A DNA stretch of 64,000 nucleotides from Octopus sinensis (GCF_006345805.1 NC_043001.1:67704001-67768000); one strand, 5' to 3'. Shown: positions 1,465-50,760, numbered from the stretch's first letter. Notes: generated from the sequence alone by a model not told the origin. Made by a program: numbers and translations.

Positions 1465-3242
1465 TCAATGGGATCCCTGTGACTGATGCAGGATTACCCA
1501 CTTGTTAATGTTTGGTTTCAAAGCTGTCAGTGAGATATGTTAATCCCCTCTTCTTTCTACGTCAAGGCGATTTCAAGTCTTTGACAGCAGACACATCACC
1601 CAACTGAAACCTGACTCAACTAAATAAGATGTGGGGAAAAGCAAGTAAAAGCAACTTAACGTTTTTTCAGAGTAATGGGTACTTTTTAGAGATTTCTTCA
1701 TACATCCACAGCTTCTGGTATCCTCCATACTTGAACCTTGCTAGAGCTGCTGTGTTATTTTGAAGTTCAATGAAGCTTTCTTGTATGTCAGTATTGACTT
1801 CAGATGGATCAACAGCGAAGGGATTCACAAACCACTGTGGCACCGTCATTTGGAGTAGATCAGAGAAGCAAATTTCTATATCATTATGTAACTGCTTCAA
1901 ACGATTAACGTAATCTGTTGAGTTATCATCAAGCAGCTTGGTGGATATGCTTGCTAAGGAACAAAGCTGTGCAAATTCCCATCTTCCAAGATTCAGCCAG
2001 AATAACTTTAGTTTCCCGTTGAAGGTTTTAATTTTCTCTTTGCCAGAAAACAAAGTGGTGTTATTTCCTTGAAGTTCTATATTAAGGACATTTAACCTTT
2101 CTAGTATGTCAGACAAGTAAAAAAAATATCACTCAATGCATCAACAAGTTTCTCTCTAAGTTCTGTTTCACTCAAAAAAAAGGAAAGATAACTGTGTTCC
2201 AAAGTGCATGGAGGCAATTACTCTTGGATAGCCATCTGACTTCTGTATGCAACACAAGTCGTTCAAATTCCTTGTTGTTATTTTCACATAACTGTTCAAG
2301 AGGCGATCTTACAGTGCATTTTTTTTTTTATCAAATTGACAGTTTTGATAACATTTATAAGTGCATCATTCAAAGTCCTGCCATGTGTTTGGCAACCAGA
2401 TGCTGTTAATGAAGAACACAATGCACCCAAAGCACATTAGGAACAGCTTTTTTAAAGTAAGCACTGAATCCTCAATATCTTCCAATCATAGCAGCAGCCC
2501 CATCTGTTGCACAAGCCACAATGTTCTTCAATGGGATGTTGTTCTCTTCAAAATAGGCCTCAAGTCTTTTGAAGATGGACTCCCCTTTTGTGTCAGTCAT
2601 TAATTTCAAAGCAAAAAGCAATTCTTGACATGTATCATTAACATTAAGAAACCTAACAAATTCCATTAAAAAAGGCAGAATTATCAGGTAGAGTTGATTC
2701 ATCTATTTGAAGTGAGAACTCATTTACCCTAAGTTTTGAAACTAATTGGCTTTCAACATCAGCTGCCATTTCATCAATCCGTCATGATGCTGATGAGTTG
2801 CTCAGAGAAATAACACTAGTAACCTCTTGTGGACTCTGATCCATGACTGTTGAAAGCACTACAGCCACTGCAAGCATAATCAAAGATTCACCAATGGTGT
2901 GAGACTAACCAGCTTTTGCAATTAAATTTCTATCTTATAAGAAGCCAACATTCCTTTGTCTACTTTTGCTGCTTTTTGAGTGAACATTTGATTCACTGTC
3001 ATCCTTCCTTGAAACTTATCATCACATAACCTTTTGAAGAAATCTAGTGGCTTGTCTTTTTTATCTCTGTGGGCAGTCTCCAGATGTTTTTTAGTTTGCA
3101 GGGACATATACTTTCATTTGAGAACAAAATCATGCATAGCAAACACATAGGCTTGGTAGAATTTTGTGGAGATTTAATGAATCCATAAGCAAGATATTCG
3201 ACAGAATATTGTCTACACTTTTTTTTTAGATATACTTGCCAT
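1465..3242 (-). pseudogene. Degenerate hAT (Charlie/Buster, SCAND3/ZBED-like) transposase spanning start to stop, with frameshifts and stops
   Basis: ATG at 3242 gives MASISKKK/CRQYSVEYLAYGF..PMCLLC (BED-like), KHLETAHRDKKDKPLDFFKRL, ACATDGAAAMIGRY (catalytic D), QWFVNPF, and C-terminal PNINKWVILHQSQGSH* (TGA 1467-1465). Confidence 0.85.
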
Positions 3243-5860: not shown

Positions 5861-6181
5861 TTATGTATGTATGTGTAGCAGGAATTCAGAAACAAATCCC
5901 TGTATATGCAGTTGGGCATCATGAGCAAAGCACCATAGTTTCACACGATTGGTGCATTAACCGACTAATCAATGTGAAGCGATGGCACGAACAGGCTTTT
6001 TTGAACATTCTAGAATTTGACATCTGGTCCCCTATAATAAATGTTTGGCGTGCATTTTTATCTGTAGACGACCAGGAAGGCGGCTGAGATAGCACAGATA
6101 GATGACAAGAAACTCCGTCGTCACAAATGTAGCACAGTTGTTTCCAGATATGCTGGGCGAATCGCATGCCATAAACTTAAA
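5861..6181 (-). other. 321-bp CpG-rich insertion flanked by a 9-bp direct repeat (GTAGTATCT), with a (CATA)n tail on the minus strand
   Basis: GTAGTATCT occurs at 5852-5860 and 6182-6190; TATGTATGTATG is at the left end. Confidence 0.4.
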
Positions 6182-6424
6182 GTAGTATCTATCTCCCTGT
6201 ATATAATTATTGCTGTTGTTATCTGTAAGAGACCAACGCAGTTTGTCTTTATGTGTGATAATACAATCATCTGTTTAATGTTCACAAGTATTGTTCAATT
6301 ACTTCTACACAGCTCAAGAAACATTCATTCATGAACCAACCAGTCACCACCACAGACCAAACCACAACCTAGAGGACGTAATGTACATTCGTACTTATGT
6401 ATGTATGTCGACACTACTTGACAA

Positions 6425-6590
6425 CTGGTATTGGTTTGTTTACATCCCCATAACTGAGTGGCTCGGCATAACAGATTGAGAGAATAAGTACGTGGCTTAA
6501 AAGGAGTACGAGGTCAATTTGTTCAAATAAAACCTTTCAGCATGGCCGCAGTCCAATGACTGAAACAAACAAAAGACAACAGATTCTAAT
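6425..6590 (+). mobile_element. 3' half of the abundant microsatellite-containing SINE family
   Basis: GTTTACATCCCC..AGAATAAGTAC..CAGCATGGCCGCAGTCCAATGACTGAAACA, as in the full copies at 16607 and 60487. Confidence 0.65.
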
Positions 6591-7325
6591 AACAGAAGAA
6601 TATCCACTCTTAAAGAATAGGTAAATAGAAAGTCGTGACATTTTTGCATGTCTTTAGAAGTTTAGCTGTTTCGTTCAATTGAAAACAGAAACCAGATGAA
6701 TTAGTTTTAAATGCATGTACAGTAGTATGAAAAAGATTTTTTTCAAGCTTTTTTTTTGCTCAAAGAACCCTCTAGATTCAATACCGTCATCATTTAATGC
6801 CTCCATGGGTCAAACAAAATTCGTTCATTAAGGCAGATTTTTCTAAAGTCGGACGTTATCCCTGTCGCCAGCACTCACTCGTTTCCAATCAAGATAATGT
6901 TTCCCCACGGTCAAGCATGTTTTCACGGATTAGAATTCAACGACACTGCTTGTCAAGGATACATCCCCCCCACACACACACTATACCATTGTATTTGACA
7001 TAAAAATCAGTCAGTTTTGTTTATTGATTTCCTCTGTTTCCTGAAATATTCGACTCACCGTCCATCTTTTACATTTCATGTCTAACCTGTTGAACAATAA
7101 AAGCTACGTTAACGAGCTGCAGTTAACTAACTGAACACATAATATGGTACTTGTCTATTGTCGTGGTCCCGGTTTCTCACACGCGAATTCGCGCGTGCGC
7201 GCGCGCCAGACGTAGGTACTCGATACTCGAGATCCTACGAGGTGACTTGCGCATGCGCAGTGCAGAATTCGCGCATGCGTGTTACCCCCCACCCCCTAAA
7301 AAAAAGGTGTTGGATTTCACTAAAA

Positions 7326-7368
<43 letters not shown>

Positions 7369-7655
7369 ACATTTTCAATTTTACACAAAAAAATTACATA
7401 GTCGCTTTCCTCGCGGATTTACAGATAAATGAATTAATTACTATTTTACAGAATAAAATTAATGAATTAATTATATAAATTAAATAATTCTTGAAAATTA
7501 ATTAATATTAATAATATTTTTTGAACAAAGTAAATAATTTATAAAACTTGGTTAATAATTTTTTTTACACAAACGCGAACGTATATAATTTGTGAAACTT
7601 TTTTTTTTTTTTACAGACGTATATAATTTGGTAAACTTAATGAATTAATTTCTTC

Positions 7656-8078
7656 TCATCATCATCATCGTTTAACGTCCGTTCTCCATGCCAGCATGGG
7701 TTGGACGGTTCGACCGGGGATCTGGGAAGCCAGAAGGCTGCACCAGACTCCAGTCTTATCTGGCAATGTTTCTACAGCTGGATGCCCTTCCTAACGCCAA
7801 CCACTCCGAGAGTGTAGTGGGTGCTTTTTACATGCCACCCGCACAGGTGCCAGGAGAGGCTGGCAACGGCCACGGTCGGATTGGTGCCAGTCGAGGCGGC
7901 TCTGGCATCGGCCACGATTCGGATAGTGCTTTTTACGTACCACCAGTCCAGGGGTCCTGGCATTTGCCGGGTGCCACACTTGCCCCAACATGTCTTCGCA
8001 AGCAAAGGGGGTTGGCGTGGGTGCCTGTCGTGGGATGAGGTTCGATATCAACTTCGCTTGCCTCAACAGGTCTTTGTG
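7656..8078 (-). mobile_element. RTE-type LINE 3' UTR fragment nested in the left foldback arm
   Basis: Same 3' end and (GAT)n tail as the RT-containing LINE copies at 12558 and 50760. Confidence 0.8.
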
Positions 8079-9117
8079 TATAAATGTATAAATTTTTCGC
8101 ACTAAATTCTTTCCGTAGAATTTATCAAAAAACGCGCAAAATTATTCCGTAGAATTTATCAAATTAAAAAACGCAAAATTAATATATTTTTTGAAATTGC
8201 AAATTATTTAGAATATAAAACAAATGAAGTTAAATTTTAAAAATAAATGTCATATACTTATACTCTGTAAGGTGCTGTGTTCACACTTCAATTTACTATT
8301 TTCTAGAAATGCTGCTTTTCTAATTGAAACAATTTTTGTCAATCTCCATTTAAAAGTCCATCATGTCTCTTGAGACATATCAAAATGAACAACTTTGAAT
8401 TACGCGGCGGTGGTGGTGGTGGTGGTGGTGGTGTGAGGTTCTAATTTTTTTTTCTGATCTCTCTTTGCCCCCTCTTTATCTCAGTTGTTCATTCCGCTAA
8501 TATTTAGAAAAATTTTCGCGCCCAATTTTTGTTGTCGCGGGAAAAGATGAACGATTTAAAATAAATATATCTTAATTGTAGTGTGAGAAAGTATATATAT
8601 TCTGATGACAAAATATATTATCTTTCAAAAACATCCCAAATTTATAGACTATATCGTGTAGGTTTAAGAAATATATATATATATATATAAGAGAATGAAA
8701 CATCTTTCATCTGTCTCCCCACCACACCTCCATCTAGGGGGGCAAAGAGAGATCAGAAAAAAATTAGAACCTCACACCACCACCACCGCCGCCGCCGCGT
8801 AATTCAAAGTTGTTCATTTTGATATGGCTCAAGAGGCATTATGGACTTTTAAATGGAGATTGAGAAAAATTGTTTCAATTAGAAAAGCAACATTTCTAGA
8901 AAATAGTAAATTGAAATGTGAACACAGCACCTTACAGAGTATATGACATTTATTTTTAAAATTTAACTTCATTTGTTTTATATTCTAAATAATTTGCAAT
9001 TTCAAAAAATATATTAATTTTGCGTTCTTTAATTTGATAAATTCTACGGAATAATTTTGCGCGTTTTTTGATAAATTCTACGGAAAGAATTTAGTGCGAA
9101 AAATTTATACATTTATA

Positions 9118-9540
9118 CACAAAGACCTGTTGAGGCAAGCGAAGTTGATATCGAACCTCATCCCACGACAGGCACCCACGCCAACCCCCTTTGCTTGCGA
9201 AGACATGTTGGGGCAAGTGTGGCACCCGGCAAATGCCAGGACCCCTGGACTGGTGGTACGTAAAAAGCACTATCCGAATCGTGGCCGATGCCAGAGCCGC
9301 CTCGACTGGCACCAATCCGACCGTGGCCGTTGCCAGCCTCTCCTGGCACCTGTGCGGGTGGCATGTAAAAAGCACCCACTACACTCTCGGAGTGGTTGGC
9401 GTTAGGAAGGGCATCCAGCTGTAGAAACATTGCCAGATAAGACTGGAGTCTGGTGCAGCCTTCTGGCTTCCCAGATCCCCGGTCGAACCGTCCAACCCAT
9501 GCTGGCATGGAGAACGGACGTTAAACGATGATGATGATGA
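9118..9540 (+). mobile_element. Mirror copy of the RTE-type LINE 3' UTR fragment in the right foldback arm
   Basis: Reverse complement of 7656-8078; ends ...GGACGTTAAACGATGATGATGATGA. Confidence 0.8.
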
Positions 9541-9826
9541 GAAGAAATTAATTCATTAAGTTTACCAAATTATATACGTCTGTAAAAAAAAAAAAAGTTT
9601 CACAAATTATATACGTTCGCGTTTGTGTAAAAAAAATTATTAACCAAGTTTTATAAATTATTTACTTTGTTCAAAAAATATTATTAATATTAATTAATTT
9701 TCAAGAATTATTTAATTTATATAATTAATTCATTAATTTTATTCTGTAAAATAGTAATTAATTCATTTATCTGTAAATCCGCGAGGAAAGCGACTATGTA
9801 ATTTTTTTGTGTAAAATTGAAAATGT

Positions 9827-9867
<41 letters not shown>

Positions 9868-10419
9868 TTTTAGTGAAATCCAACACCTTTTTTTTAGGGG
9901 GTGGGGGGTAACGCGCATGCGCGAATTCTGCACTGCGCATGCGCAAGTCACCTCGTAGGATCTCGAGTATCGAGTACCTACGTCTGGCGCGCGCGCACGC
10001 GCGAATTCGCGTGTGAGAAACCGGGACCACGACAATAAAGTACAACATAATATAGTAATATGTTCAAATACCAGCGAGTTCAACTTGGCTTTTCATTCTT
10101 TAATCAACTTAATTTCTCCCTCAAAAATTGCCGGCCGACCACAGTGGTGATCCAGCATGACCGCAGCCGCATGGCAGAAACGAATAAACGAGTAGTACCA
10201 AAATTGGAAAAGGAAAATGTCAAGTGTCAAATTATTGTTTTCGTGCTAGAGGGAGTACAAAATTACCTCCCTTTAAGTAAAGGTATTATCTCCCTTGAAA
10301 GAAAAATAATTCGCTGTTAATCCGATTTTGCTGATTCGGTAAGATTTGCCTACCTGTGGTAACGGCATTCAAGCCATGACTATTTCGTCATTTTAGAAAT
10401 ATCTAGGCTACTTCATTGG

Positions 10420-10686
10420 GATATGTTGCCTTGGTACGCTACTGTAATCCAGTTACCTCGAAGTTTGGTTGATTGTCCGGTTTGAGGATGGGAATCTTGG
10501 TAGTCGGTCTTCTATAGCGACCGGGTGTCCGTGTTAAGTTCTGCATCAATATGGTGCTCATCAGACCCAGCTTGTCTCAGGAGGGTCGATTCAACCCAGG
10601 GCGAAAACACGGCAGGCAAAAGACCCCGTGTCGAGCAGTAGTGTGAATAGCCGTCAACTAGCAACCTCTTCGATATAATTGATTTT
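10420..10686 (+). ncRNA. 7SL: 7SL / SRP RNA-like gene (divergent paralog or pseudogene)
   Basis: Alu-domain CTGTAATCC; ACCGGGTGTCCGTGTTAAGTTCTGCATCAATATGGTG matches the conserved 7SL GGGTGTCCGCACTAAGTTCGGCATCAATATGGTG; AGGAGGG..CCCAGG..GCAGG helix-8 region; CAGTAGTG..GTGAATAGCC. The 3' end ATAATTGA pairs with 5' TTGATTGT and is followed by TTTT at 10683-10686. Confidence refers to homology, not function. Confidence 0.88.
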
Positions 10687-11899
10687 AGAGAGACTAGCTG
10701 CTATTTCTTACAGATTTCACTATTCCATACATGCTCCACTGCAGCCAGTCGCCTGTTCATATTTAGCCTCATGCCATTTTAAATCAAAGATATTTCAACC
10801 ATAACCATCAAGTCTCACATTTAAAGACAGAATGTCTATAAGTTTATATTAAACATTGTGTACTTCTTCTAAACGACCGTAGCCCTGTGTTTTGACGTCT
10901 ATTTCTAGTAGGTTGAATGATCAAGCAGAGATATTCTTGGCTTTTAAGGAAGTCAGTTGTGTCTAATTCCCTACTTATCTTAGCTAGTTCTATTTATATT
11001 AATGACAAGATTACGGAACATATATCCTTGTGACTGAATGACCAAGCACAAAACATTAGGCCACCAAAGGTAGATATCTTGTCCATAAACAATATTCTAC
11101 CTGCCATTACCCTCTCATCCCTTGACAACCATTATCTTCTTACCTTTGCCATCTCGTTTATTGACATCATTCATGTCCCCCCTTACCAAACATTATCTCA
11201 CCTCCTCTATACTGCTAGCCACTACTCTCTTTTTCCCAGTCCACTCTTTACTGACATCCATCAAACTTTTGTTAACACTTCTATCATTATCCATCTCTTT
11301 CTCCTAAAATGTAACTACCATTACTACTTCTCTTCCGTTACCCATACCATGACTTCTCTCCCGTTACCCATACCATGACTTCTCTCCCATGTACCCTCTT
11401 CCACAATCTCACCTCAATCACTGTTTTCACCCATTATACTGTCTTCTCCCCCTCATCCTAATTCACATTCTGCTATCGAGCACTCTTTAGTCCTTTCACA
11501 ATGCTCTCATAGCATAGAGGAATGAGGTTCCCTTTTGTTTTACATGGTACACAGCAACCTCACAAGTGCTGGTGCTAGATAAAATACATCCAGTACACTC
11601 TGTAAAGTAGTTAGAGAATGAGCAGAGATACTTTAGGGTTGAGAGGACTGCTTGGTCTTTGTCATATTGAGGTCATGTGCTGATGACACAACAAAATACA
11701 CCCACTACATACATTCTTTGAAGTGATTGGTGTTAGAAAAAGTATGCAGCCATAGAAGCCAAATCAAAATAAAATTTATGAGTGAAACTTGATTTCTCAA
11801 AGATGCCTATGTGGCAGTAACTCTGACAACCCGTTCAACCTATGCCAGCATAGAAAGCAAATGTAAAATGAGGATGATGATATGTGTATTTATATATGT

Positions 11900-12557: not shown

Positions 12558-14403
12558 ATCATCATCATTTAATGTCTGTTTTCCATGCTAGCATGGGTTG
12601 GACGGTTCGACCGGGGTCTAGTAAGCAATAGAGGCTGCACCAGGCTCCAGTCTGATATGGCAGTGTTTCTACAGCTGGATGCCGTTCGTAATGCCAACCA
12701 CTCCGTGAGAGTAGTGGGTGTGTTTTACGTGCCACCGGCCCAGGGGCCGGAGGAAGCTGGCAAACGACCATGATCGGTTGGTGCTTTTATGTGTCACCGA
12801 CACAGCCGCCAGTCAGGTGGCGCTGGCATCTGCCACGTTCAGACGGTGCTTTTTACGTGTCACTGGCACAGGTGTCTTAACTACAATCTCCATTTGATTT
12901 TTATTTTGATGTTGGTGTTGATGTACTTGACTCAATAGGTCACCTCGAGAACAGCGGGTCACTCTACGATCCAGGCGAGCCATGAACTCACTTAATTTTT
13001 TGGGTCTTCACAGTCACAGCATATCTCAGGGGTCTCAGTCTTTGTCATTTCCTCGGTCTTTTCGTCATAGCCTCTGTGAGGCTCAACGTACTAAGGTCAT
13101 GCTTAACCACCTCGTCCCATGTCTTCCTGGGTCTACCTCTACCCCGGATTCCTTCAACAGTTTGGGAGTGGCACTTCTTTACACATCTCTCCTCATCCAT
13201 CCATAGTACATGACCAGACCAACACAATTGTCTCTCCTGCACGCTGCATCTGATGCTTCTAATGCCCAACATTTCTCTCAGGGCGCTTACACTCTGTCAT
13301 GCATGGACACTGACATTACACATCCAGCAGATCATGCTAGCTTCATTTCTTTCGAGCCTAAACATGTCTTCCGCAGTCACAGCCCATGTTTCACTACTGT
13401 GAAGCATAGCTGTTCGCACACATGCGTCGTACAATCTACCTTTCACTCTGAGCGAGAGACCCTTTGTCACCAGTAGGGGAAGAAGCTTCCTAAACTTTGC
13501 CCAGGCTATTCTTATTCTTGTGGTAACACTCTCTGAGCATCCATCCCCGCTACTAACTTGGTCACCTAGGTAGTGGAAACTATCAACTACTTCTAGTTTC
13601 TCCCCTAGGAGTGTAATGGAATCTGTTTTCTGAGTATCAGTGGTGTCTATAGCCCCTGTGCATCTGCCGCACATGAAAGCTATCTTCTCGGTTAATTTTC
13701 CTTTGATATTGCTGCACTACTTATGTGTCCATAGCTTACACTGGGTACATCTTATGGAGTTTCTACCTACACCTTTTCTACAGATCGAGCGGGTGTGTGG
13801 TGAGTTTGCCTTCCTACTTAATAGAACTTTGGTCTTTGCTACATTGACTCTAAGGCCTTTTGATTCTAAACCTAGCTTCCACACACAAAATTTCTTCTCT
13901 AGTTCCAGTAGTGATTCTGCTACGAGGGCTAAGTCATCAGCATAGAGGAGCTCCCAGGGACAACCCGTCTTAAATTCCTCTGTTATTGCCTGGAGGACTA
14001 TGATGAATAGAAGGGGACTGAGGGCTGAGCCTTGATGGACACCAACTTCTACCTGGAATTCACTCATTGCCAATCCTAACTTTACTAACAGCCTCTCTGT
14101 AAAGGGCCTGTACAGCCCTTATTAACCATTCGTCAATCTCCAGTTTCCGCATCGCCCACCAGATAAGGGATTGGGGGACTCTGTCAAAGGCTTTCTCCAA
14201 GTCCATAAAAGCTAAGTATAGGGGTTTATCTTTGGCTAGGTATTTCTCCTGCAGTTGACGAACTATGAATATGGCATCAGTGGTGCTTCTACCCGGCACA
14301 AAACCGAACTGCATCTCATCTAAGCAAGACTCTCTCCTTGATGAGATGGGCTATGACTATCTCTGTGACCTTCATTACCTGATCCAGCAGTTTGATACTC
14401 CTA
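12558..14403 (-). mobile_element. 5'-truncated RTE-clade LINE (reverse transcriptase, C-terminus and 3' UTR), frameshifted
   Basis: QFGFVPGRSTTDAIFIVRQLQEKY..DLEKAFDRVP, GVHQGSALSPLLF, CPWELLYADDL, LEVVDSFHYLG, LHSSETW; (GAT)n tail at ~12558-12568. Confidence 0.92.
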
Positions 14404-26168: not shown

Positions 26169-28490
26169 TTAGGATAATTCCATTTGCTCGTCACAGATTA
26201 AAGTACCATTATTTGTCTGGTTCTCACTAGCAGTGAAGTTTCTGGTTTGACTGAAGTCTCGGTGTTGTTCATTGTTTTCTACAAGAACAGAAGTGTGTTT
26301 AAAATTTAGGTCAGAACCCTGAATGTTTGTATATGGTGGTAAGCAATCCTTTGCTGACAGACACTTGGCAGAGATCTCACTGGTTGTTGTTCCTGTATAG
26401 GGGGAATACATTCTGGCCACATTATGCTCTGGCTTTGAATGTAAAAAGTTGTTGTTATTTACTGTGAGATCACAGGTTGCTGTATTACTATTATTTTCAA
26501 CAGGAGACAATGCGTAAGAAAGATTTGTCATTTGGTGGTCACAACCAGTAAAATTTGGCACCGCCACTCGGCAACCAGCTTGCAATTGAGTCTGTACAGA
26601 ATTTAAGTGAAGTGCATTACACAAGTTAGAGGATTTCTGTGACTGTACATATGCAGATACTTCGCATGAAGAAGGGTAACAGCTTGTATTGACATTTTCT
26701 GCTGTTTCTTTGGGAACCAATAATAAAGGTGATGCAAATTGGGAAGGAATTGATGAGTCTATGAATTGTTGATTCTGATTGGCTTCATAAATGAGGGATG
26801 ATGGAGTTGAAGAAATTGGGGGTAAAATTTCATTAGGACAAACAATCTTTTGTGGCATTACCTGCGGTGAATATGGAGTAGGTTGGTGGGAGAAAGAGTA
26901 GCACGTAATATCAGAAGGCCTTGATTGAAAAGATTGTTGATTGTGGGGTTGAAATGTCGAGACAGGCTGGTTTACAGTGGCCAGCTTCGTAGTTGTAGAT
27001 TTTACCTTTGTTGTGTTGGGAAAGCCTTGTGGTGTCATGTAATACATACTGTACTGCATAGGTGGGTAGACAGTTGGAGCTACTTGCTGGGTGGAAGCTG
27101 GTGTCACATTGGAGCCACTAGAACCAATATTCAGTTGCTGGAATTGGTGCTGAAGAACAGATTGCTTGTGGAAACTTTGCCTCTTTTGCTGAAGACGTAG
27201 ATGCTGCAATATCTTCTTACCACCTGGGTGATATTCTGTAGCTGTGTTAGTGACACCTTGATGATGAAATAATAATTGGGTTGTTGGTTCACTCTGGACT
27301 TGATCAAGATGCTGTTCAACTTGCATGCTCTGTTTCAGGGCCAAGAGCCTGTGAGGTTGCATATCAGTAGTCTCAGCAGGTAAACTCATGCGCTTTATCA
27401 GCTGTCGAGGTTTGGAGGCTGGGGCTTCCTCTAGTGACCACTGTCTCCACTTCATTCTCTCGTGATAGTTGCGATGGGAACGAGCTTTGTTTAATTCAGC
27501 TGTCCCTTTTGAGGGTCCAGTGTTACTGGCCAGCTCTTGAAATTCTTGCCGGAGTTCTGCTATCCCCTGGGCTCTAGTTGTATCACGCAGCTGTTGGCGA
27601 AACGCAATCATACCTTGAGTCATTTGTCCATCGGAAGCTCGTCTTCCTTCTCGGAAGTCAACAGGTGAATGTGTCTCGTTTCGGTCTTGAGAATAATCAG
27701 CACTTACTTGAGTTGATACTAAAGGAGGACTTTGTATAGGTGTAGGGATTGTAGTGGAAATGACTGTTCCTTGGCCAGGTTGCTGACCAGATGGTGCCGT
27801 TGAGTATCCAGCATGAGAGTAAGATGTCTGGCTTAAACCAATATCTGCCTCTAATGTTGAATCAAAGCTGGTAAAAGGTGAAGATTGGTTACTATCAGAA
27901 CTTACTTGGGGCGATATATCAGATGTATCAGAAAACTTTTGCATTTTGGTCCGGGTGTCCGAACCATAACTATCTATTTCTGATATATCTGCCTCAACAC
28001 CCTCATCAATGGAAGAGGTAATCAAATGGCTTGTCATAGTGTGTGAAGGTTTGAGACAGGTTTGAGACAGTACATCAGAGAGGCATGCTGGCTTGGCAAT
28101 AGGTGTGGCTTGGGGTAAAACAGATGGGATTACAGGCAGTGGAGGATTAGCAGTGGATCGATTAGTTGTATCAGAACTTTCTGAATAACCAGAGGTGTGT
28201 TGTGGGACAGTCGTTGATGGCCCAATTGGAGGGACACAGTCTGTAGTTTTTGTGAACAAACTTTGCTTGGTATTGAGTGGTTGCATGCGGTAAGCTGGAT
28301 TTGGGACTACACTTGGTGCTTGGGTGGAAGCAAGACGTGGATTCATGGCTTGTTCAGCAATTTGACTTGGTCGCCGTTTTCGCGCATCCAGTTGATTATA
28401 AACAGGAAAACTGCTACGATGTTGCTTGAGCCGATCAAGTAATAAATAATATATTGCACTGAATGGATCATATGCATTATTTTTCAGAGA
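26169..28490 (-). CDS. SIK2: Salt-inducible kinase, terminal coding exon (end of UBA domain plus entire C-terminal tail, 773 aa + stop)
   Basis: Acceptor TTTTCAG at 28491; SLKNNAYDPFSAIYYLLLDRLK (UBA), RRPSQIAEQ, SSIDEGVE, EGRRASDG, TQGMIAFRQQL and KGTAELN are SIK1/2-type motifs; TAA at 26171-26169. The ORF track starts too late (28346). Confidence 0.93.
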   Translation of the reverse strand, partial: SLKNNAYDPFSAIYYLLLDRLKQHRSSFPVYNQLDARKRRPSQIAEQAMNPRLASTQAPSVVPNPAYRMQPLNTKQSLFTKTTDCVPPIGPSTTVPQHTSGYSESSDTTNRSTANPPLPVIPSVLPQATPIAKPACLSDVLSQTCLKPSHTMTSHLITSSIDEGVEADISEIDSYGSDTRTKMQKFSDTSDISPQVSSDSNQSSPFTSFDSTLEADIGLSQTSYSHAGYSTAPSGQQPGQGTVISTTIPTPIQSPPLVSTQVSADYSQDRNETHSPVDFREGRRASDGQMTQGMIAFRQQLRDTTRAQGIAELRQEFQELASNTGPSKGTAELNKARSHRNYHERMKWRQWSLEEAPASKPRQLIKRMSLPAETTDMQPHRLLALKQSMQVEQHLDQVQSEPTTQLLFHHQGVTNTATEYHPGGKKILQHLRLQQKRQSFHKQSVLQHQFQQLNIGSSGSNVTPASTQQVAPTVYPPMQYSMYYMTPQGFPNTTKVKSTTTKLATVNQPVSTFQPHNQQSFQSRPSDITCYSFSHQPTPYSPQVMPQKIVCPNEILPPISSTPSSLIYEANQNQQFIDSSIPSQFASPLLLVPKETAENVNTSCYPSSCEVSAYVQSQKSSNLCNALHLNSVQTQLQAGCRVAVPNFTGCDHQMTNLSYALSPVENNSNTATCDLTVNNNNFLHSKPEHNVARMYSPYTGTTTSEISAKCLSAKDCLPPYTNIQGSDLNFKHTSVLVENNEQHRDFSQTRNFTASENQTNNGTLICDEQMELS

Positions 28491-29399: not shown

Positions 29400-29432
<33 letters not shown>

Positions 29433-29770
29433 TTAATAAGGGTGAGAGAATTAGATACTAATTTAATAGTATATCTATTCAACACCAAGTGGCCTAGTGC
29501 TCCGAGAAACCTGGATTATTATAATATTTTATAATATATTATAATATTTTTACAAAATAAATATAAGAGAGTGGTCACTATATGGCTCACTCTAGCACCA
29601 GTTAATCCAAAAGGTTTCAACCACAAAAATACATGTTTCCCATGAAAGTCAGTACGATTGTGAGCTAACAATCGTACTGACTTTCATGGGAAACATGTAT
29701 TTTTGTGGTTGAAACCTTTTGGACTAACTGGTGCTAGAGTGAGCCATATAGTGACCACTCTCTTATATTT

Positions 29771-29809
<39 letters not shown>

Positions 29810-42660: not shown

Positions 42661-42816
42661 TATCCATAAAAATAAAACAGGTATACTCATACACTGACTC
42701 ATTCATTCATTCATGCAATTAAATGCTAAGTTAAAATTCTTTGACCGAAATCAAAATTTCAAAATTAAAATCAATTAAAAATGTACTTCTATATTTAAGA
42801 GATGAGGAATTATGTG

Positions 42817-43157
42817 CATTATTTACATTCAACGGATATTTGTCCTCATCTTGTTTGTTGTTAACACAACGTTTCGGCTGATATACCCTCCAGCCGTCTT
42901 CAGGTGTCTTGGGGAAATTTCAAACCTGGGTTCTCATTCCTAAGGTAGCTATCGATGTTATTATTATTGTTATTATTGACCTGAACAACAACAATAATAA
43001 TAATAACAATAACAACATCAAAAAAGACCTTAGGAATGAGAACCCAGGTTTGAAATTCCCCCAAGACACCTGAAGAAGGTTGGAGGGTATATCAGCTGAA
43101 ATTGTTGTGTTAACAACAAACAAGATGAGGACAAATATCCGTTGAATGTAAATAATG
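42817..43157. mobile_element. Inverted pair of Penelope-like terminal repeats (~130-bp arms, (TAA/TTG)n spacer)
   Basis: 42817-42946 is the reverse complement of 43027-43157 with a few mismatches; each arm carries a hammerhead-type motif characteristic of PLE pseudo-LTRs. Confidence 0.75.
42863..42908 (-). ncRNA. Minimal type I hammerhead ribozyme motif (Penelope-type)
   Basis: GACAC-CUGAAGA-C-GGCUG-GAGGGUAUAU-CAGCC-GAAACGUU-GUGUU: stem I GACAC/GUGUU, stem II GGCUG/CAGCC, conserved core CUGANGA and GAAA, palindromic ACGU stem III. Confidence 0.75.
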
Positions 43158-43322
43158 TAAATAAAAATGTGTAGCTGAAATTTTACTTTATAAAATTTCT
43201 TTATTTAAATTCAAAATTTTATTTCAGATCTGACCCACTACAGCACCCCATTTCAGTTTTAGGAGACAAAAAAAGAGTATATAGCACATTAAGAAGTCAG
43301 TTCCTGAAATGTGTAAACTTAC

Positions 43323-48486: not shown

Positions 48487-49590
48487 ACTACATAAATCTG
48501 ATCAATGTGTAATGCATGAAAGTACTAGATTATTTCAATATTGTAAAATTGTAAAAACTGCAAATAACACAACATAACAATTTTCAAAAAAAAAAAAAAA
48601 TTTATTGTATTTTTTTTATTGCTTATCACTCCATTTTTCTTGCTGATTCCAAAAATGAAACTATTTTTTGTGTATCATCAACAGTTAAAAAAATGTCGAC
48701 TTTCAATGTTATTATATATTCGATATTGTTATAATGTTCAGCTACTAAACGTATGTCTAATTTTCTTTTTCAGACCAATTACTAAGTTCTACTACTTTCA
48801 GGATGGCTACTAGAGTATGTAAAATTCTCCAGATACATTTTGCTATGTGTGTGGTTATTATATTGGAAAAAAGCAGGTATTGCATAAGAACGTGAAAGGT
48901 GCCAAATTGTGGATACGTACAGGCTCTATTTCATAATGCCCATGGGTGACCAGGACAAACCACTGCCCCACATGTGATATGTGGAAACTGTCGATCTACT
49001 CTAGAAGGATGGTTAAGAGGTACAGGAAGGTCAATGCCTTTTGCCATTCCAAGGGTATGGAGGGAGCCAAAGAACCAATGACTTACTTTTGTATGATCAA
49101 CGTGCCAAAGTACAGAAAAGTGAAAGGAAGACAAGCTCTTCAGTATCCAAACATACCATCATCTAGAGTACCTGTCCCACATGATGACAGTTTACAAGTA
49201 CCACTACAACCAGAAAATATTTCATCTGAAGAGTCAAAAAGTAGCAGCAGCCAAGAAATAGAGGAAACTTTCATACCAAGAATGACTTCAGAGCCTCACT
49301 TTCCAAATCAGAGTGAGCTAGATGATTTAATCAGAGATCTGGGTCTTACTAAGTCAGGAGATGAACTTCTTTCATTAAGGTTGAAAGAATGGAATCTACT
49401 GGGGGAAGACTGCAAGACATCTGGGTACTGGAAACACCATGAAGAATTTGAAATTTACTATGAAAATATTAATGGTCTGCGTTATTGTAAAGATGTGATT
49501 GGTTTATTTACTGCTATTGAACTCAAGCATGATTCTGCAGAATGGCGACTGTTCATAGGCAGCTCAACACGAAGTCTCAAAGCAGTGTTG
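48487..49590 (+). mobile_element. 5' part of a Chapaev3-like (CMC) DNA transposon with frameshifted transposase
   Basis: MATRVCK/SPDTFCYVCG, MGDQDK, YFCMIN, QYPNIPSSRVPVPHD, QSELDDLIRDLGLTK, EWRLFIGSSTRSLKAVL; CAC-start near 48487. The family assignment is from recalled motifs. Confidence 0.7.
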
Positions 49591-49599
49591 CCTCTTGCA

Positions 49600-50760
49600 C
49601 ACTCTATATATATAGGGATAATAAACACTGAAGATGCTTAGGAAACAGATTCCATCACATCTCAGGGGGAGAAACTAAAAGTAGTTGATAGCTTCCACTA
49701 CCTAGGTGACCAAGTCTGTAGTGGGGGTGGATGCTTGGAGAGCATTGCCACTAGAATAAGAATAGTCTGGGCAAAGTTCAGAAAGCTCTTACCTCAACTG
49801 GTGACAAAGGGCCTCTCACTCAGAGTGAAAGATAGACTATGATGCATGTGTGCGTACTGCCATGCTACACGGCAGTGAAACATGGGCCATAACTGTTGAG
49901 GATATACGTAGGCTTGAAAGAAATGAAGCTAGTATGATCCGCTGGATATGTAATGTCAGTGTGCACACACAAGAGTGTGTAATCACCCCGAGAGAAATGT
50001 TGGACATAAGAAGCATTGGATGTGGTACGCAAGTCGTGCTGCATATGGTTGAGGAGAGCTGTGTGAAGAAGTGTCACTCTCTAACAGTGGAAGGAAGCTG
50101 TAGAAGAGAGAGACTCAGGAACACATGGGGTGAGGTGGTGAAGCATGACCTTTGAATGTTGGGCCTCACAGAGGTGATGACAAGAGACCGAGACCTCTGG
50201 AACTAGGCTATGATTGAGAAGACTGGGCAAGTAAAGTGAGATCACAGCTGTAGATTTTACCAGTGTCGCATAACCAGCCCATTTAAAAAGTACCTTTGAA
50301 TTGTTGGGCGACATGCCATGCTTCAGGAGACCTACTGAGTCAAGTAAAATCAAAAGTCAAAATCAAAAATAGCAATAAGCATCATTCATGTGTGGGTCGT
50401 TGCCAGTGCCACCTGACTGACTCCCTGTGCCAGAGGCATGTAAAAAGCACCATCCGAATGTGGTCAATAGCAGTCCCCCCAACCCTGCTTGCCCCAACTG
50501 GCTACTTTGCTAGTGGCATGTAAAAAGCACCATCCAAATGTGGCTGATGCCAGTGCTGCCTGACTGGCTCCCATGCCGGTGGTACGTAAAAAGCGTCCAC
50601 TACACTCTTGGAGTGGTTGGCATTAGGAAGGGCATCCAGCTGTAGAAACCTTGCCAGATCAGATTGGAGCCTGGTGCAGCCTCCTGGCTAGCCAGTCTCC
50701 AATCAAACCATCCAACCCATGCCAGCATGAAAAACAGATGTTAAACAATGGTGATGATGA
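49600..50760 (+). mobile_element. 5'-truncated RTE LINE (same family as 12558-14403)
   Basis: GEKLKVVDSFHYLG, MLHGSETWAITVEDIRRLERNEASMIRW; 3' UTR with GTAAAAAGCACC modules; (GAT)n tail at ~50750-50760. Confidence 0.88.

What the first reader, a model, noticed from the sequence alone, without database searches (positions are those of the whole stretch)
7137..10053. 2.9-kb foldback transposon: 1.3-kb inverted arms, 9-bp TSD, no coding capacity
Seen: arms 7146-8472 and 8738-10044, a 265-bp spacer, internal tandem subrepeats, and a perfect ACATAATAT duplication exactly at both boundaries. The terminal bases are GGTACTT versus TGTACTT on the reverse strand. Established: 9-bp TSDs with very long modular TIRs typify Mutator-superfamily foldback elements such as Drosophila FB. 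Inference: a possibly uncatalogued cephalopod foldback family. It can extrude a >1-kb cruciform or form long dsRNA and is a potential rearrangement hotspot next to a 7SL-like gene. The reconstructed empty site lies inside a small inverted repeat (TGAACACAT..ATGTTCA).
Basis: partly seen in the sequence, partly recalled or inferred. Interest (0 to 1): 0.75.

Follow-up and report, generated by a model that had tools for sequence, protein, structure and literature searches.

The report
Hairpin-shaped non-coding transposon in octopus DNA
A 2.9-kb stretch of Octopus sinensis DNA is almost certainly a non-coding "foldback" jumping gene inserted just upstream of a 7SL RNA gene. It is real and tidy but an ordinary kind of element, and its transposon family is unresolved.

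Summary
Arms 7146-8472 and 8738-10044 are inverted copies, 97.6% identical, separated by a unique 265-bp spacer. A perfect ACATAATAT direct repeat flanks them, and no ORF exceeds 116 aa. The window is Octopus sinensis chromosome CM016863.1, about 16 kb downstream of SIK1. A genuine metazoan SRP (7SL) RNA gene lies 376 bp to the right.

The best reading is a non-autonomous cut-and-paste DNA transposon with foldback architecture. The Mutator assignment is not established:
- The duplication can be read as 8 or 9 bp.
- Merlin elements (8-9-bp duplications, 5'-GG termini, abundant in Octopus) fit almost as well.
- The arms are not arrays of subrepeats. About a third of each arm is a copy of a common Octopus SINE-like repeat.

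Two new observations:
- Arm differences cluster at the arm edges, with none in the central 806 bp. This suggests arm-to-arm gene conversion or a polishing effect.
- The element is not CpG-depleted, unlike its surroundings.

I could not test copy number or an empty site. No second copy exists in about 270 kb of Octopus DNA I could fetch, and the orthologous loci I retrieved stop 6 kb short.

Verdict: real, ordinary, a new member of a known kind.

The parts
7137..7145 (.). Left copy of the target-site duplication, ACATAATAT (maximal 9 bp; 8-bp parses are possible)
   Evidence: Read directly. Identity and non-extendability were checked, where random 9-mer identity was about 1.5e-5.
7146..8472 (+). 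Left arm of the inverted repeat (1327 nt)
   Evidence: the repeat finder I1-I4, I6 and I11. The gapped alignment to the right arm is 97.6% identical.
7146..7325 (+). Terminal module, GC- and CpG-rich (54% GC, CpG o/e 1.5). It holds the terminal motif GGTACTTGTCTATTGTCGTGGTCCCGG, two subterminal GAATTCGCG-type motifs 80 bp apart (one inside the palindrome CGCGAATTCGCG), and the palindrome TGCGCATGCGCA. These are the presumed transposase-binding ends.
   Evidence: (family D3). The motif occurs only at the two outer ends of the element, even with 4 mismatches allowed across the whole window. The binding role is inference.
7333..7363 (.). (TG)15 microsatellite; its length differs between the arms
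   Evidence: TRF and the arm alignment. The weak mir-297 Rfam hits here (33-35 bits against a gathering score of 90) are low-complexity noise.
7364..7655 (+). AT-rich segment (18% GC) with three loose copies of a 22-nt unit (ACGTATATAATTTGNNAAACTT)
   Evidence: the repeat finder D1. No other copy was found in the Octopus DNA held.
7656..8072 (-). Copy of a dispersed Octopus SINE-like repeat, with its (ATG)n tail at the 7656 side. It is present at the same place in both arms and is 100% identical between them.
   Evidence: 54 BLAST hits in the window and L001-L003, with the boundary at 7656 shared by all copies and the far-end motif CTTGCCTCAACAGGTCTT shared with other copies. Its spurious ORF matches 'hypothetical proteins' of O. 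vulgaris and O. bimaculoides. No TSD of its own was found.
8073..8405 (+). AT-rich segment containing a 34-nt unit repeated twice
   Evidence: the repeat finder D4. TRF reports the mirror copy in the right arm at 9015-9085: period 34, 2.0 copies, score 101.
8409..8433 (.). (GGT)8 microsatellite near the inner end of the arm; the right arm has a shorter GGT/GGC version
   Evidence: TRF and the arm alignment.
8473..8737 (.). Unique 265-nt AT-rich spacer (the middle domain or loop), with an (AT)9 run. It is non-coding and not palindromic.
   Evidence: Its self-complement score is within the shuffled range apart from (AT)n.
8738..10044 (-). Right arm of the inverted repeat (1307 nt), the mirror image of the left arm including the SINE-like copy (about 9124-9540)
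10045..10053 (.). Right copy of the target-site duplication, ACATAATAT
10421..10684 (+). Neighbouring gene, not part of the element: metazoan SRP (7SL) RNA, 376 bp from the element's right end. It lies in a roughly 5-kb stretch (6.0-11.0 kb) that is less CpG-depleted than the rest of the window.
   Evidence: Rfam RF00017, 79.4 bits (gathering 70), E 2.9e-18, full-length. The TTTT run at its 3' end is and the CpG profile.

Best explanation
This is one insertion of a non-autonomous class II (cut-and-paste, TIR-type) DNA transposon with foldback architecture.

What it is:
- 91% of its 2,899 bp consists of two inverted 1.3-kb arms around a 265-bp non-coding middle.
- It encodes nothing. It must have been moved in trans by a transposase that recognises the terminal ~25-180 bp. 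That region holds the motif G/TGTACTT..TATTGTCGTGGTCCCGG and the subterminal CpG-rich palindromes.
- The transposase joins the ends to a target cut with an 8-9-nt stagger. Repair of that stagger produced the ACATAATAT duplication.
- My estimate for the mobilising enzyme is Mutator-like about 55%, Merlin about 20-25%, and another or unknown superfamily for the rest.

How the arms arose:
- The arms are not classical arrays of subrepeats. They look like an inverted duplication of a 1.3-kb half-element that already carried, or later shared by conversion, a copy of a common Octopus SINE-like repeat.
- Since then the arms appear to have been kept alike in their centre by arm-to-arm gene conversion, with divergence accumulating at their outer and inner edges.

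Where it landed:
- It inserted 376 bp upstream of a 7SL RNA gene, inside a locally CpG-preserved (probably unmethylated) island.
- It has not undergone the CpG decay seen in the surrounding genome. This fits a young insertion, protection from methylation, or both.

Shown: the inverted arms, the flanking direct repeat, the absence of coding capacity, the nested repeat, the uneven arm divergence, the CpG pattern, and the species and locus.
Inferred: mobility in trans, the transposase superfamily, the binding sites, gene conversion, and age.
For: - The 1.3-kb inverted arms at 97.6% identity and the 265-nt unique spacer.
- The perfect, non-extendable 9-bp direct repeat exactly at both arm ends, with chance about 1.5e-5 per position pair.
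- The terminal motif is present only at the two outer ends.
- No ORF exceeds 116 aa.
- The arms differ by 12 substitutions and several indels, including microsatellite lengths. They are two real, slightly diverged copies and not one sequence read twice.
- There are zero substitutions in 7363-8168 (806 bp), against 1.4% in the outer 217 bp and 3.7% in the inner 214 bp. P(max gap) is 2e-4 by simulation.
- CpG o/e is 1.57 in the non-SINE parts against 0.27 in the background, Poisson P 2e-19. The value is above all 232 background windows.
- Octopus genomes carry recently active Mutator (21 families), Merlin (2), unclassified TIR (49) and MITE (65) families (PMC13282606).
- MULE TSDs are 8-11 bp with long TIRs (PMC6446971).
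- Foldback-like elements with 8-10-bp TSDs and no ORFs are known: Tm1 and Tetris.
- Another hairpin-type element in the same window (about 29.43-29.80 kb) is an O. sinensis-specific insertion with empty sites in O. vulgaris and O. bimaculoides. So such elements have moved recently in this lineage.
Against: - Only one copy is in hand. No other copy of the terminal module, AT-rich segments or spacer was found in the window plus about 270 kb of O. sinensis, O. vulgaris and O. bimaculoides DNA. None was found in JGI metagenomes or among proteins predicted from public assemblies. These searches have very little power for a 2.7-Gb genome.
- No empty site could be examined. The orthologous loci retrieved end at window position ~16,100.
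- No autonomous partner is known.
- One terminal base differs between the ends (G/T), and there is a 3-nt indel 7 nt in.
- The arms lack the tandem-array organisation of classical FB elements.
- The structure rests on a single long-read assembly, and I could not check its reads.
Confidence: 0.75

Rival explanations
1. The same kind of element, but mobilised by a Merlin (IS1595-like DDE) transposase and not a Mutator-like one. It would be a long-armed non-autonomous Merlin derivative.
For: - Merlin elements are flanked by 8- or 9-bp TSDs.
- All described Merlin families start with 5'-GG, and their TIRs reach 462 bp (PMC8101967). The left end here is GGTACTT.
- O. bimaculoides has the most Merlin sequences (191) among the protostomes surveyed.
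- Two Merlin families are recently active in O. vulgaris.
Against: - The right end starts TG, not GG.
- The arms are three times longer than any reported Merlin TIR.
- Recently active Mutator families and insertions outnumber Merlin about 10 to 1 in O. vulgaris.
- Most published foldback elements that could be classified fall in Mutator.
Confidence: 0.2
2. Assembly artefact. The second arm would be a foldback chimera from long-read sequencing (a missed adapter or a palindromic read) that was carried into the O. sinensis assembly.
For: The structure is known from one assembly only. The central 659 nt of the arms are 100% identical, as over-polishing or a read-through of both strands could produce. 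From my own knowledge, the assembly is PacBio-based, and I could not inspect reads.
Against: - A chimera would not restore the true right flank with a perfect direct copy of the 9 bases that precede the left arm.
- It would not contain a unique, non-palindromic 265-nt spacer.
- It would not differ between arms by 12 substitutions, a 3-nt terminal indel, a 6-nt indel and different microsatellite lengths.
Confidence: 0.04
3. Not a mobile element. It would be a one-off inverted duplication or templated insertion made by replication template switching or hairpin-mediated break repair at this spot.
For: It is single-copy in all the sequence I could search. The arms consist of ordinary-looking DNA, including a common SINE-like repeat, and not dedicated TIR subrepeats. 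Long palindromes can arise by such mechanisms (established knowledge).
Against: - An in-situ inverted duplication does not create a direct 9-bp repeat at the two outer boundaries.
- The CpG-rich composition of the non-SINE parts differs sharply from local DNA, as expected for an incoming sequence.
- The ends carry a defined terminal inverted motif abutting the duplication.
Confidence: 0.05
4. Two copies of a conventional 1.3-1.6-kb element inserted head-to-head or one into the other, and not a single foldback unit.
For: Head-to-head pairs of elements can mimic a foldback structure (established knowledge).
Against: - Each copy would need its own pair of termini and its own TSD. The terminal motif occurs only at the two outer ends, even with 4 mismatches allowed.
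- The inner ends of the arms (…TTTGCCCCC) show no terminal motif.
- The only flanking duplication brackets the whole 2.9-kb unit.
Confidence: 0.02

Closest known systems
Drosophila melanogaster Foldback (FB) elements
   Same: Very long inverted arms make up nearly the whole element, with a short non-coding middle. Most copies have no transposase and rely on mobilisation in trans. FB has a 9-bp TSD (my own knowledge; the grouping of some FB elements with Mutator is stated in PMC3169594).
   Different: FB arms are built from long arrays of short tandem repeats (own knowledge). Here subrepeats occur only 2-3 times, and a third of each arm is a SINE-like repeat. There is no sequence similarity, and no FB4-like coding copy is known.
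Tm1 Mutator/Foldback family of root-knot nematodes (PMC3169594)
   Same: Composite inverted arms of unequal length within one element, mostly 9-bp (8-10) TSDs, non-coding MITE-like members, and arm-to-arm identity below 100% (mean 93% in Tm1, 97.6% here).
   Different: Tm1 is a demonstrated family of dozens of copies with a Phantom-type MULE transposase copy and arms made of 14-bp repeat arrays. Here there is one copy, no known transposase and no such arrays.
Tetris foldback element of Drosophila virilis (PMC4079207)
   Same: Non-autonomous, few structurally complete copies, 8-10-bp TSDs, a non-coding middle domain, and a superfamily inferred only from TSD length. That is the same evidential situation as here.
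   Different: Tetris arms contain about 220-bp tandem repeats that seeded satellite DNA. Nothing comparable is seen here.
Galileo (P-superfamily foldback-like element, Drosophila)
   Same: Long, internally repetitive inverted arms. It shows that foldback architecture evolves independently in different superfamilies.
   Different: Galileo makes 7-bp TSDs (own knowledge) and encodes a P/THAP transposase. The duplication here is 8-9 bp.
Merlin superfamily non-autonomous elements
   Same: 8-9-bp TSD, a 5'-GG terminus (left end), and abundance in Octopus.
   Different: Reported Merlin TIRs are 24-462 bp, whereas the arms here are 1.3 kb. The right end starts TG.
Large genomic palindromes maintained by arm-to-arm gene conversion (e.g. 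sex-chromosome palindromes)
   Same: The arms are near-identical in the centre, with divergence concentrated at the edges of homology. This is a comparison of behaviour only.
   Different: Those palindromes are tens of kb to Mb, carry genes, and are not TSD-flanked insertions (own knowledge).

Membership tests
Class II TIR (cut-and-paste) transposon insertion | Terminal inverted repeats at both ends | tested here: met
   GGTACTTGTCTATTGTCGTGGTCCCGG versus TGTACTT---TATTGTCGTGGTCCCGG, continuing for 1.3 kb.
Class II TIR (cut-and-paste) transposon insertion | Short direct target-site duplication immediately outside the ends | tested here: met
   ACATAATAT at 7137-7145 and 10045-10053. It is perfect and non-extendable, with chance about 1.5e-5.
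Class II TIR (cut-and-paste) transposon insertion | Several copies at different loci with different TSDs (a family) | tested here: inconclusive
   No second copy was found in the window plus L001-L003, in two metagenome scans, or in a peptide search of TIR reading frames. No whole Octopus genome was searchable, so the power is negligible.
Class II TIR (cut-and-paste) transposon insertion | Empty site (single ACATAATAT) in related genomes or individuals | not testable with these tools
   The orthologous loci in O. vulgaris (L002) and O. bimaculoides (L001) end at window ~16,177 and ~16,009, which is 6 kb short. Further look-ups failed.
Foldback (FB-like) elements, a structural class | Inverted arms form most of the element, with a short middle domain | tested here: met
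   The arms are 1327 + 1307 nt of 2899 (91%) and the spacer is 265 nt. The predicted single-strand fold pairs 1300 of 1327 left-arm bases with the right arm.
Foldback (FB-like) elements, a structural class | No (or rarely any) coding capacity | tested here: met
   The longest ORF is 116 aa and lies in the nested SINE-like repeat.
Foldback (FB-like) elements, a structural class | Arms composed largely of tandem subrepeat arrays of variable copy number (FB, Tm1, Tetris, Galileo) | tested here: not met
   There are only 2-3 copies of 22-nt and 34-nt units plus microsatellites. The bulk is unique sequence plus a 417-bp SINE-like copy. This feature is typical of the class and not strictly required.
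Mutator superfamily (MULE) | TSD of 8-11 bp, typically 9 | tested here: met
   The maximal direct repeat is 9 bp, and 8-bp parses are also possible. The criterion is from PMC6446971.
Mutator superfamily (MULE) | Long TIRs (commonly hundreds of bp) | tested here: met
   The arms are 1.3 kb and the terminal module is 180 bp. The surveyed MULE TIR range is 14-613 bp, so the arms exceed it.
Mutator superfamily (MULE) | An autonomous relative with the same termini encoding a MULE/MURA-type DDE transposase | not testable with these tools
   No eukaryotic genome or TE library could be searched. No transposase-like ORF is associated with these termini in the window.
Merlin superfamily | TSD of 8 or 9 bp | tested here: met
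   The criterion is from PMC8101967.
Merlin superfamily | TIRs start with 5'-GG | tested here: inconclusive
   The left end is GG and the right end is TG.
Merlin superfamily | An autonomous relative encoding a DDE_Tnp_IS1595 transposase | not testable with these tools
   The reason is the same as for Mutator.
hAT superfamily | 8-bp TSD together with short TIRs beginning YARNG | tested here: not met
   An 8-bp parse is possible, but the termini (GGTAC, TGGTA or TGTAC) do not fit YARNG. The consensus is from my own knowledge.
P superfamily foldback-like elements (Galileo) | 7-bp (P: 8-bp) TSD and THAP-binding sites in the arms | tested here: not met
   The direct repeat is 9 bp (8 at minimum) and not 7. 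THAP sites were not assessed.

The most novel reading that the evidence does not exclude
The element could be a founding or rare member of an undescribed Octopus-specific foldback family. On this reading, the arms arose by inverted duplication of a half-element that had acquired a host SINE, and they are homogenised by intra-element gene conversion. The family would have been mobile since the O. sinensis / O. vulgaris split and would prefer unmethylated, open chromatin such as the 7SL promoter region. Its 1.3-kb hairpin would then be a candidate source of long dsRNA, either as an endo-siRNA precursor or an ADAR substrate, in an animal group noted for RNA editing. No paper in the searchable library describes foldback transposons in cephalopods.
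Probability: 0.12. Interest if true: 0.5.

Novelty: new member of a known kind. Interest (0 to 1): 0.25.

Why it matters
If confirmed as a family, it would add a foldback-type element to the cephalopod repeat catalogue. Curated annotation there still leaves dozens of recently active TIR families unclassified. It would also give a clean case for studying how long inverted arms are built from ordinary DNA, including a SINE, and kept alike by gene conversion. A 1.3-kb perfect-centre palindrome 376 bp upstream of a 7SL gene is a plausible fragile or dsRNA-forming site, but nothing here shows such an effect. In practice it matters mainly for annotation. The element should be masked as a DNA transposon, and the spurious ORFs in its arms should not be called as genes.

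Tried and rejected
1. Other copies of the termini. None of these searches found a copy, but none covers an Octopus genome, so the negatives are weak.
   - BLAST of each element part against the window and L001-L003 found only the SINE-like segment to be multi-copy.
   - Two scans of JGI metagenome contigs with terminal patterns gave 0 hits.
   - A search of 5.8 billion predicted proteins with the two open reading frames of the terminal module gave 0 hits.

2. Reaching the orthologous site for an empty-site test.
   - Exact look-ups of junction and flank ORFs found nothing.
   - The SIK1 route gave O. bimaculoides, O. vulgaris and O. sinensis loci, but all stop about 6 kb short because the flank is capped at 10 kb.
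   - An exhaustive HMMER search with the right-flank ORF gave one irrelevant hit.
   - An exact look-up of ten nearby ORFs found none on record.

3. Two nested or head-to-head copies. Rejected, because the terminal motif is only at the outer ends.

4. The spacer as a decayed continuation of the palindrome. Rejected.

5. A TSD for the nested SINE-like repeat. None is convincing, so the order of events (SINE first, or conversion later) is unresolved.

6. A tRNA, 5S or 7SL-like head in the nested repeat. No tRNA was found, and no Rfam hit beyond low-complexity mir-297 noise.

7. Relatedness to the two smaller hairpin elements in the window (29.5 kb and 42.8 kb). Their termini are unrelated.

8. 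The empty-site mini-palindrome. It is a 6-bp stem and I judged it to be chance.

9. Literature. No paper combines foldback, transposon and cephalopod. The mollusc papers mention foldback only in passing. The O. sinensis assembly paper is not in the library.
Full report
OBSERVATION

The reported structure is in the sequence at the reported coordinates.
- The repeat finder recovers the inverted arms as a chain of collinear blocks: 7156-7391/9802-10037, 7324-7611/9584-9871, 7600-8258/8938-9596 (659 nt, 100%), 8259-8427/8775-8943 and 8447-8472/8738-8763.
- A gapped global alignment of 7146-8472 against the reverse complement of 8738-10044 gives 1295 matches, 12 substitutions and 20 gap columns, which is 97.6% identity.
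- Between the arms lie 265 nt of AT-rich unique sequence. Apart from an (AT)n run, it has no self-complementarity beyond shuffled controls.
- ACATAATAT occurs at 7137-7145 and at 10045-10053, directly abutting the arms. The neighbouring bases differ on both sides, so 9 bp is the maximal direct repeat.
- Two random 9-mers of this window match with frequency about 1.5e-5, so the duplication is not chance.
- No ORF in the element exceeds 116 aa.
- As a single strand, the element is predicted to fold into one long hairpin, with 1300 of 1327 left-arm bases paired to the right arm.

WHERE IT IS

The only long ORF in the window (26169-28346, minus strand) is the last exon of the kinase SIK1. It is 100% identical to the O. 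vulgaris / O. sinensis protein.
- The window is 100% identical over 47.8 kb to Octopus sinensis chromosome CM016863.1.
- It is 98.8% identical to O. vulgaris OX597818.1.
- It is 88-94% identical to O. bimaculoides CM046605.1.
- Window position x corresponds to CM016863.1 position 67,704,000 + x.

The element lies in intergenic DNA about 16 kb downstream of the SIK1 stop codon. To its right, 376 bp away, is a full-length match to the Rfam metazoan SRP (7SL) RNA model at 10421-10684. It scores 79.4 bits against a gathering score of 70 and ends in a T-run.

ANATOMY OF AN ARM

From the outside in, each arm consists of:
1. A 180-bp GC- and CpG-rich terminal module (7146-7325). It holds the terminal motif, two GAATTCGCG-type motifs 80 bp apart (one within the palindrome CGCGAATTCGCG), and the palindrome TGCGCATGCGCA.
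2. A (TG)15 run.
3. A 290-bp segment of 18% GC with three loose copies of a 22-nt unit.
4. A 417-bp copy (7656-8072) of a dispersed repeat.
5. A 330-bp AT-rich segment with a 34-nt unit repeated twice.
6. A (GGT)8 run and about 40 nt more.

The dispersed repeat has at least 54 BLAST matches in the Octopus DNA I held. All copies share the boundary at its (CAT)n/(ATG)n end, and several share the far-end motif CTTGCCTCAACAGGTCTT. Its accidental ORF matches 'hypothetical proteins' annotated in O. vulgaris and O. bimaculoides. It behaves as a SINE-type element with a simple-repeat tail. No tRNA-, 5S- or 7SL-like head was detected.

The arms are therefore not arrays of subrepeats as in Drosophila FB, Tm1 or Tetris. 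They are mostly unique sequence with a common SINE-like repeat embedded at the same place in both. I could find no target-site duplication for that embedded copy. Either it was already in the half-element when the arms were duplicated, or it was copied from one arm to the other.

First, the arm differences are unevenly spread.
- There are 3 substitutions in the outer 217 bp, none in the next 806 bp (7363-8168, which includes the SINE-like copy), 1 in the following 90 bp, and 8 in the inner 214 bp.
- A gap that long among 12 random substitutions has probability about 2e-4.
- This is the pattern expected if the arms exchange sequence by gene conversion, which is least effective at the edges of homology.
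- It could also be produced by consensus polishing in a long-read assembly. I cannot tell the two apart without reads.

Second, CpG content stands out.
- The window is strongly CpG-depleted (background o/e 0.27, median 0.21 in 1.5-kb windows, maximum 0.81).
- The element has o/e 1.19 overall and 1.57 outside the SINE-like copy. That is 43 CpGs where 7.3 are expected at the background ratio (P about 2e-19). It also shows no TG/CA excess.
- The 1-kb bins on either side (0.72 and 0.88), which include the 7SL gene, are also less depleted than the rest.
- So the element lies in, and stands out from, a roughly 5-kb CpG-preserved island.
- The simplest readings are that the insertion is young, that the region is unmethylated in the germline, or both.
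- A preference for open, unmethylated chromatin near gene starts is well known for plant Mutator elements (my own knowledge). That gives weak support at best.

WHAT IT IS

Inverted ends abutted by a perfect short direct repeat, a composition foreign to the local DNA, and no coding capacity add up to one insertion of a non-autonomous cut-and-paste DNA transposon with foldback architecture. I put this at about 0.75.

The alternatives fare badly.
- An assembly chimera would not regenerate the right flank with a direct copy of the 9 bases preceding the left arm. It would not contain a unique spacer, and its arms would not differ by 12 substitutions, a terminal 3-nt indel, a 6-nt indel and microsatellite lengths.
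- An in-situ inverted duplication does not make a direct repeat at the outer boundaries.
- Two head-to-head copies would each need their own termini, yet the terminal motif occurs only at the two outer ends, even with four mismatches allowed.

WHICH SUPERFAMILY

- The duplication is 9 bp at most. If the adjacent T is counted as part of the element, the ends read TGGTACTT / TGTACTT with an 8-bp duplication. A chance extra match of one base on either side is common.
- MULEs make 8-11-bp duplications and have long TIRs (PMC6446971). Most foldback elements that could be classified fall in Mutator (PMC3169594, PMC4079207).
- The same papers stress that foldback architecture has evolved repeatedly. 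Galileo, for example, is a P element.
- Merlin elements also make 8- or 9-bp duplications, always start 5'-GG (as the left end does here), have TIRs up to 462 bp, and are more numerous in O. bimaculoides than in any other protostome surveyed (PMC8101967).
- In the curated O. vulgaris annotation, recently active families include 21 Mutator, 2 Merlin, 21 hAT, 49 unclassified TIR and 65 MITE families (PMC13282606).
- hAT is disfavoured because the termini do not fit its consensus. Galileo-type P elements are excluded by the duplication length.
- My estimate is Mutator-like about 55%, Merlin about 20-25%, and other for the rest.

WHAT COULD NOT BE TESTED

Both need whole Octopus genomes, which these tools do not search.

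For copy number I tried several indirect routes.
- BLAST against about 270 kb of fetched Octopus DNA.
- Two metagenome scans.
- A protein-space search with the open frames of the terminal module.

For the empty site I tried these routes.
- Exact ORF look-ups.
- An exhaustive HMMER search with the right-flank ORF.
- The SIK1 gene as an anchor. The retrieved orthologous loci end at window position ~16,100, which is 6 kb short of the element.

All negatives are therefore weak. One positive side result came out of this work. A different hairpin-bearing element at about 29.43-29.80 kb is present in O. sinensis but absent, with clean empty sites, from both O. vulgaris and O. bimaculoides. So small non-coding elements of this general shape have moved very recently in this lineage.

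VERDICT

This is an ordinary kind of object in a genome that is two-thirds repeats and has hundreds of recently active DNA-transposon insertions. The Mutator label, the 'family' status and the functional suggestions (cruciform, dsRNA, rearrangement hotspot) remain untested. I file it as a new member of a known kind (foldback-type non-autonomous TIR element) of modest interest. The edge-biased arm divergence and the undecayed CpG content are the points most worth a follow-up.

Noticed in passing
window 29427-29800: A roughly 350-bp insertion into a (TA)n tract carries a near-perfect hairpin (arms 29534-29664 / 29665-29795, 131 nt, 93%, no spacer). It is present in O. sinensis but absent from the orthologous sites of O. 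vulgaris (L002 ~90125-90150) and O. bimaculoides (L001 ~72860-72900). This is a very recent, species-specific insertion of unknown type. Its TSD is hidden by the microsatellite, and its termini are unrelated to the 2.9-kb element.
   Followed up: partly
window 42810-43164: A MITE-like hairpin element of about 355 bp (arms about 168 nt, 18-nt loop, termini CATTATTTACATTCAACGG...) is present in all three Octopus species. No clear TSD is visible, and it is unrelated to the 2.9-kb element.
   Followed up: partly
window 6001-11000: A roughly 5-kb stretch around the 7SL RNA gene is much less CpG-depleted (o/e 0.7-1.3) than the rest of the window (median 0.21). This suggests a germline-unmethylated island at a Pol III gene.
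   Followed up: partly
window 7248-7259 and 9934-9945: Each terminal module contains the perfect palindrome TGCGCATGCGCA. From memory, this resembles the NRF1 transcription-factor consensus. Together with CGCGAATTCGCG, it makes the element's ends look promoter-like.
   Followed up: no
window 1667-3107 (-): Three consecutive ORF fragments resemble the C-terminal part of a hAT/ZBED-type transposase and are broken by frameshifts. This is a decayed hAT-like element 4 kb left of the foldback. The identification is by eye only.
   Followed up: no
window 13045-14314 (-) and 49633-50192: Fragments of a LINE reverse transcriptase (FGFVPGRSTTDAIF and YADDLALVAES motifs). The 13052-13638 stretch has a 78%-identical inverted copy at 49633-50192.
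   Followed up: no
window 26169-28346 (-): This is the last coding exon of SIK1, 100% identical to the O. vulgaris / O. sinensis protein. It fixes the window as O. sinensis CM016863.1:67,704,001-67,768,000. No other gene is called within 10 kb downstream of SIK1 in any of the three Octopus assemblies.
   Followed up: yes
window 48946-49641 (+): A 231-aa ORF looks like part of a transposon- or virus-derived protein (…LIRDLGLTKSGDELL…WRLFIGSSTRSLKAV…). It was not identified.
   Followed up: no
window 7328-7391 and 9804-9867: Weak Rfam mir-297 matches (33-35 bits against a gathering score of 90) fall on the (TG)n/(CA)n runs. They are low-complexity noise and not microRNA genes.
   Followed up: yes
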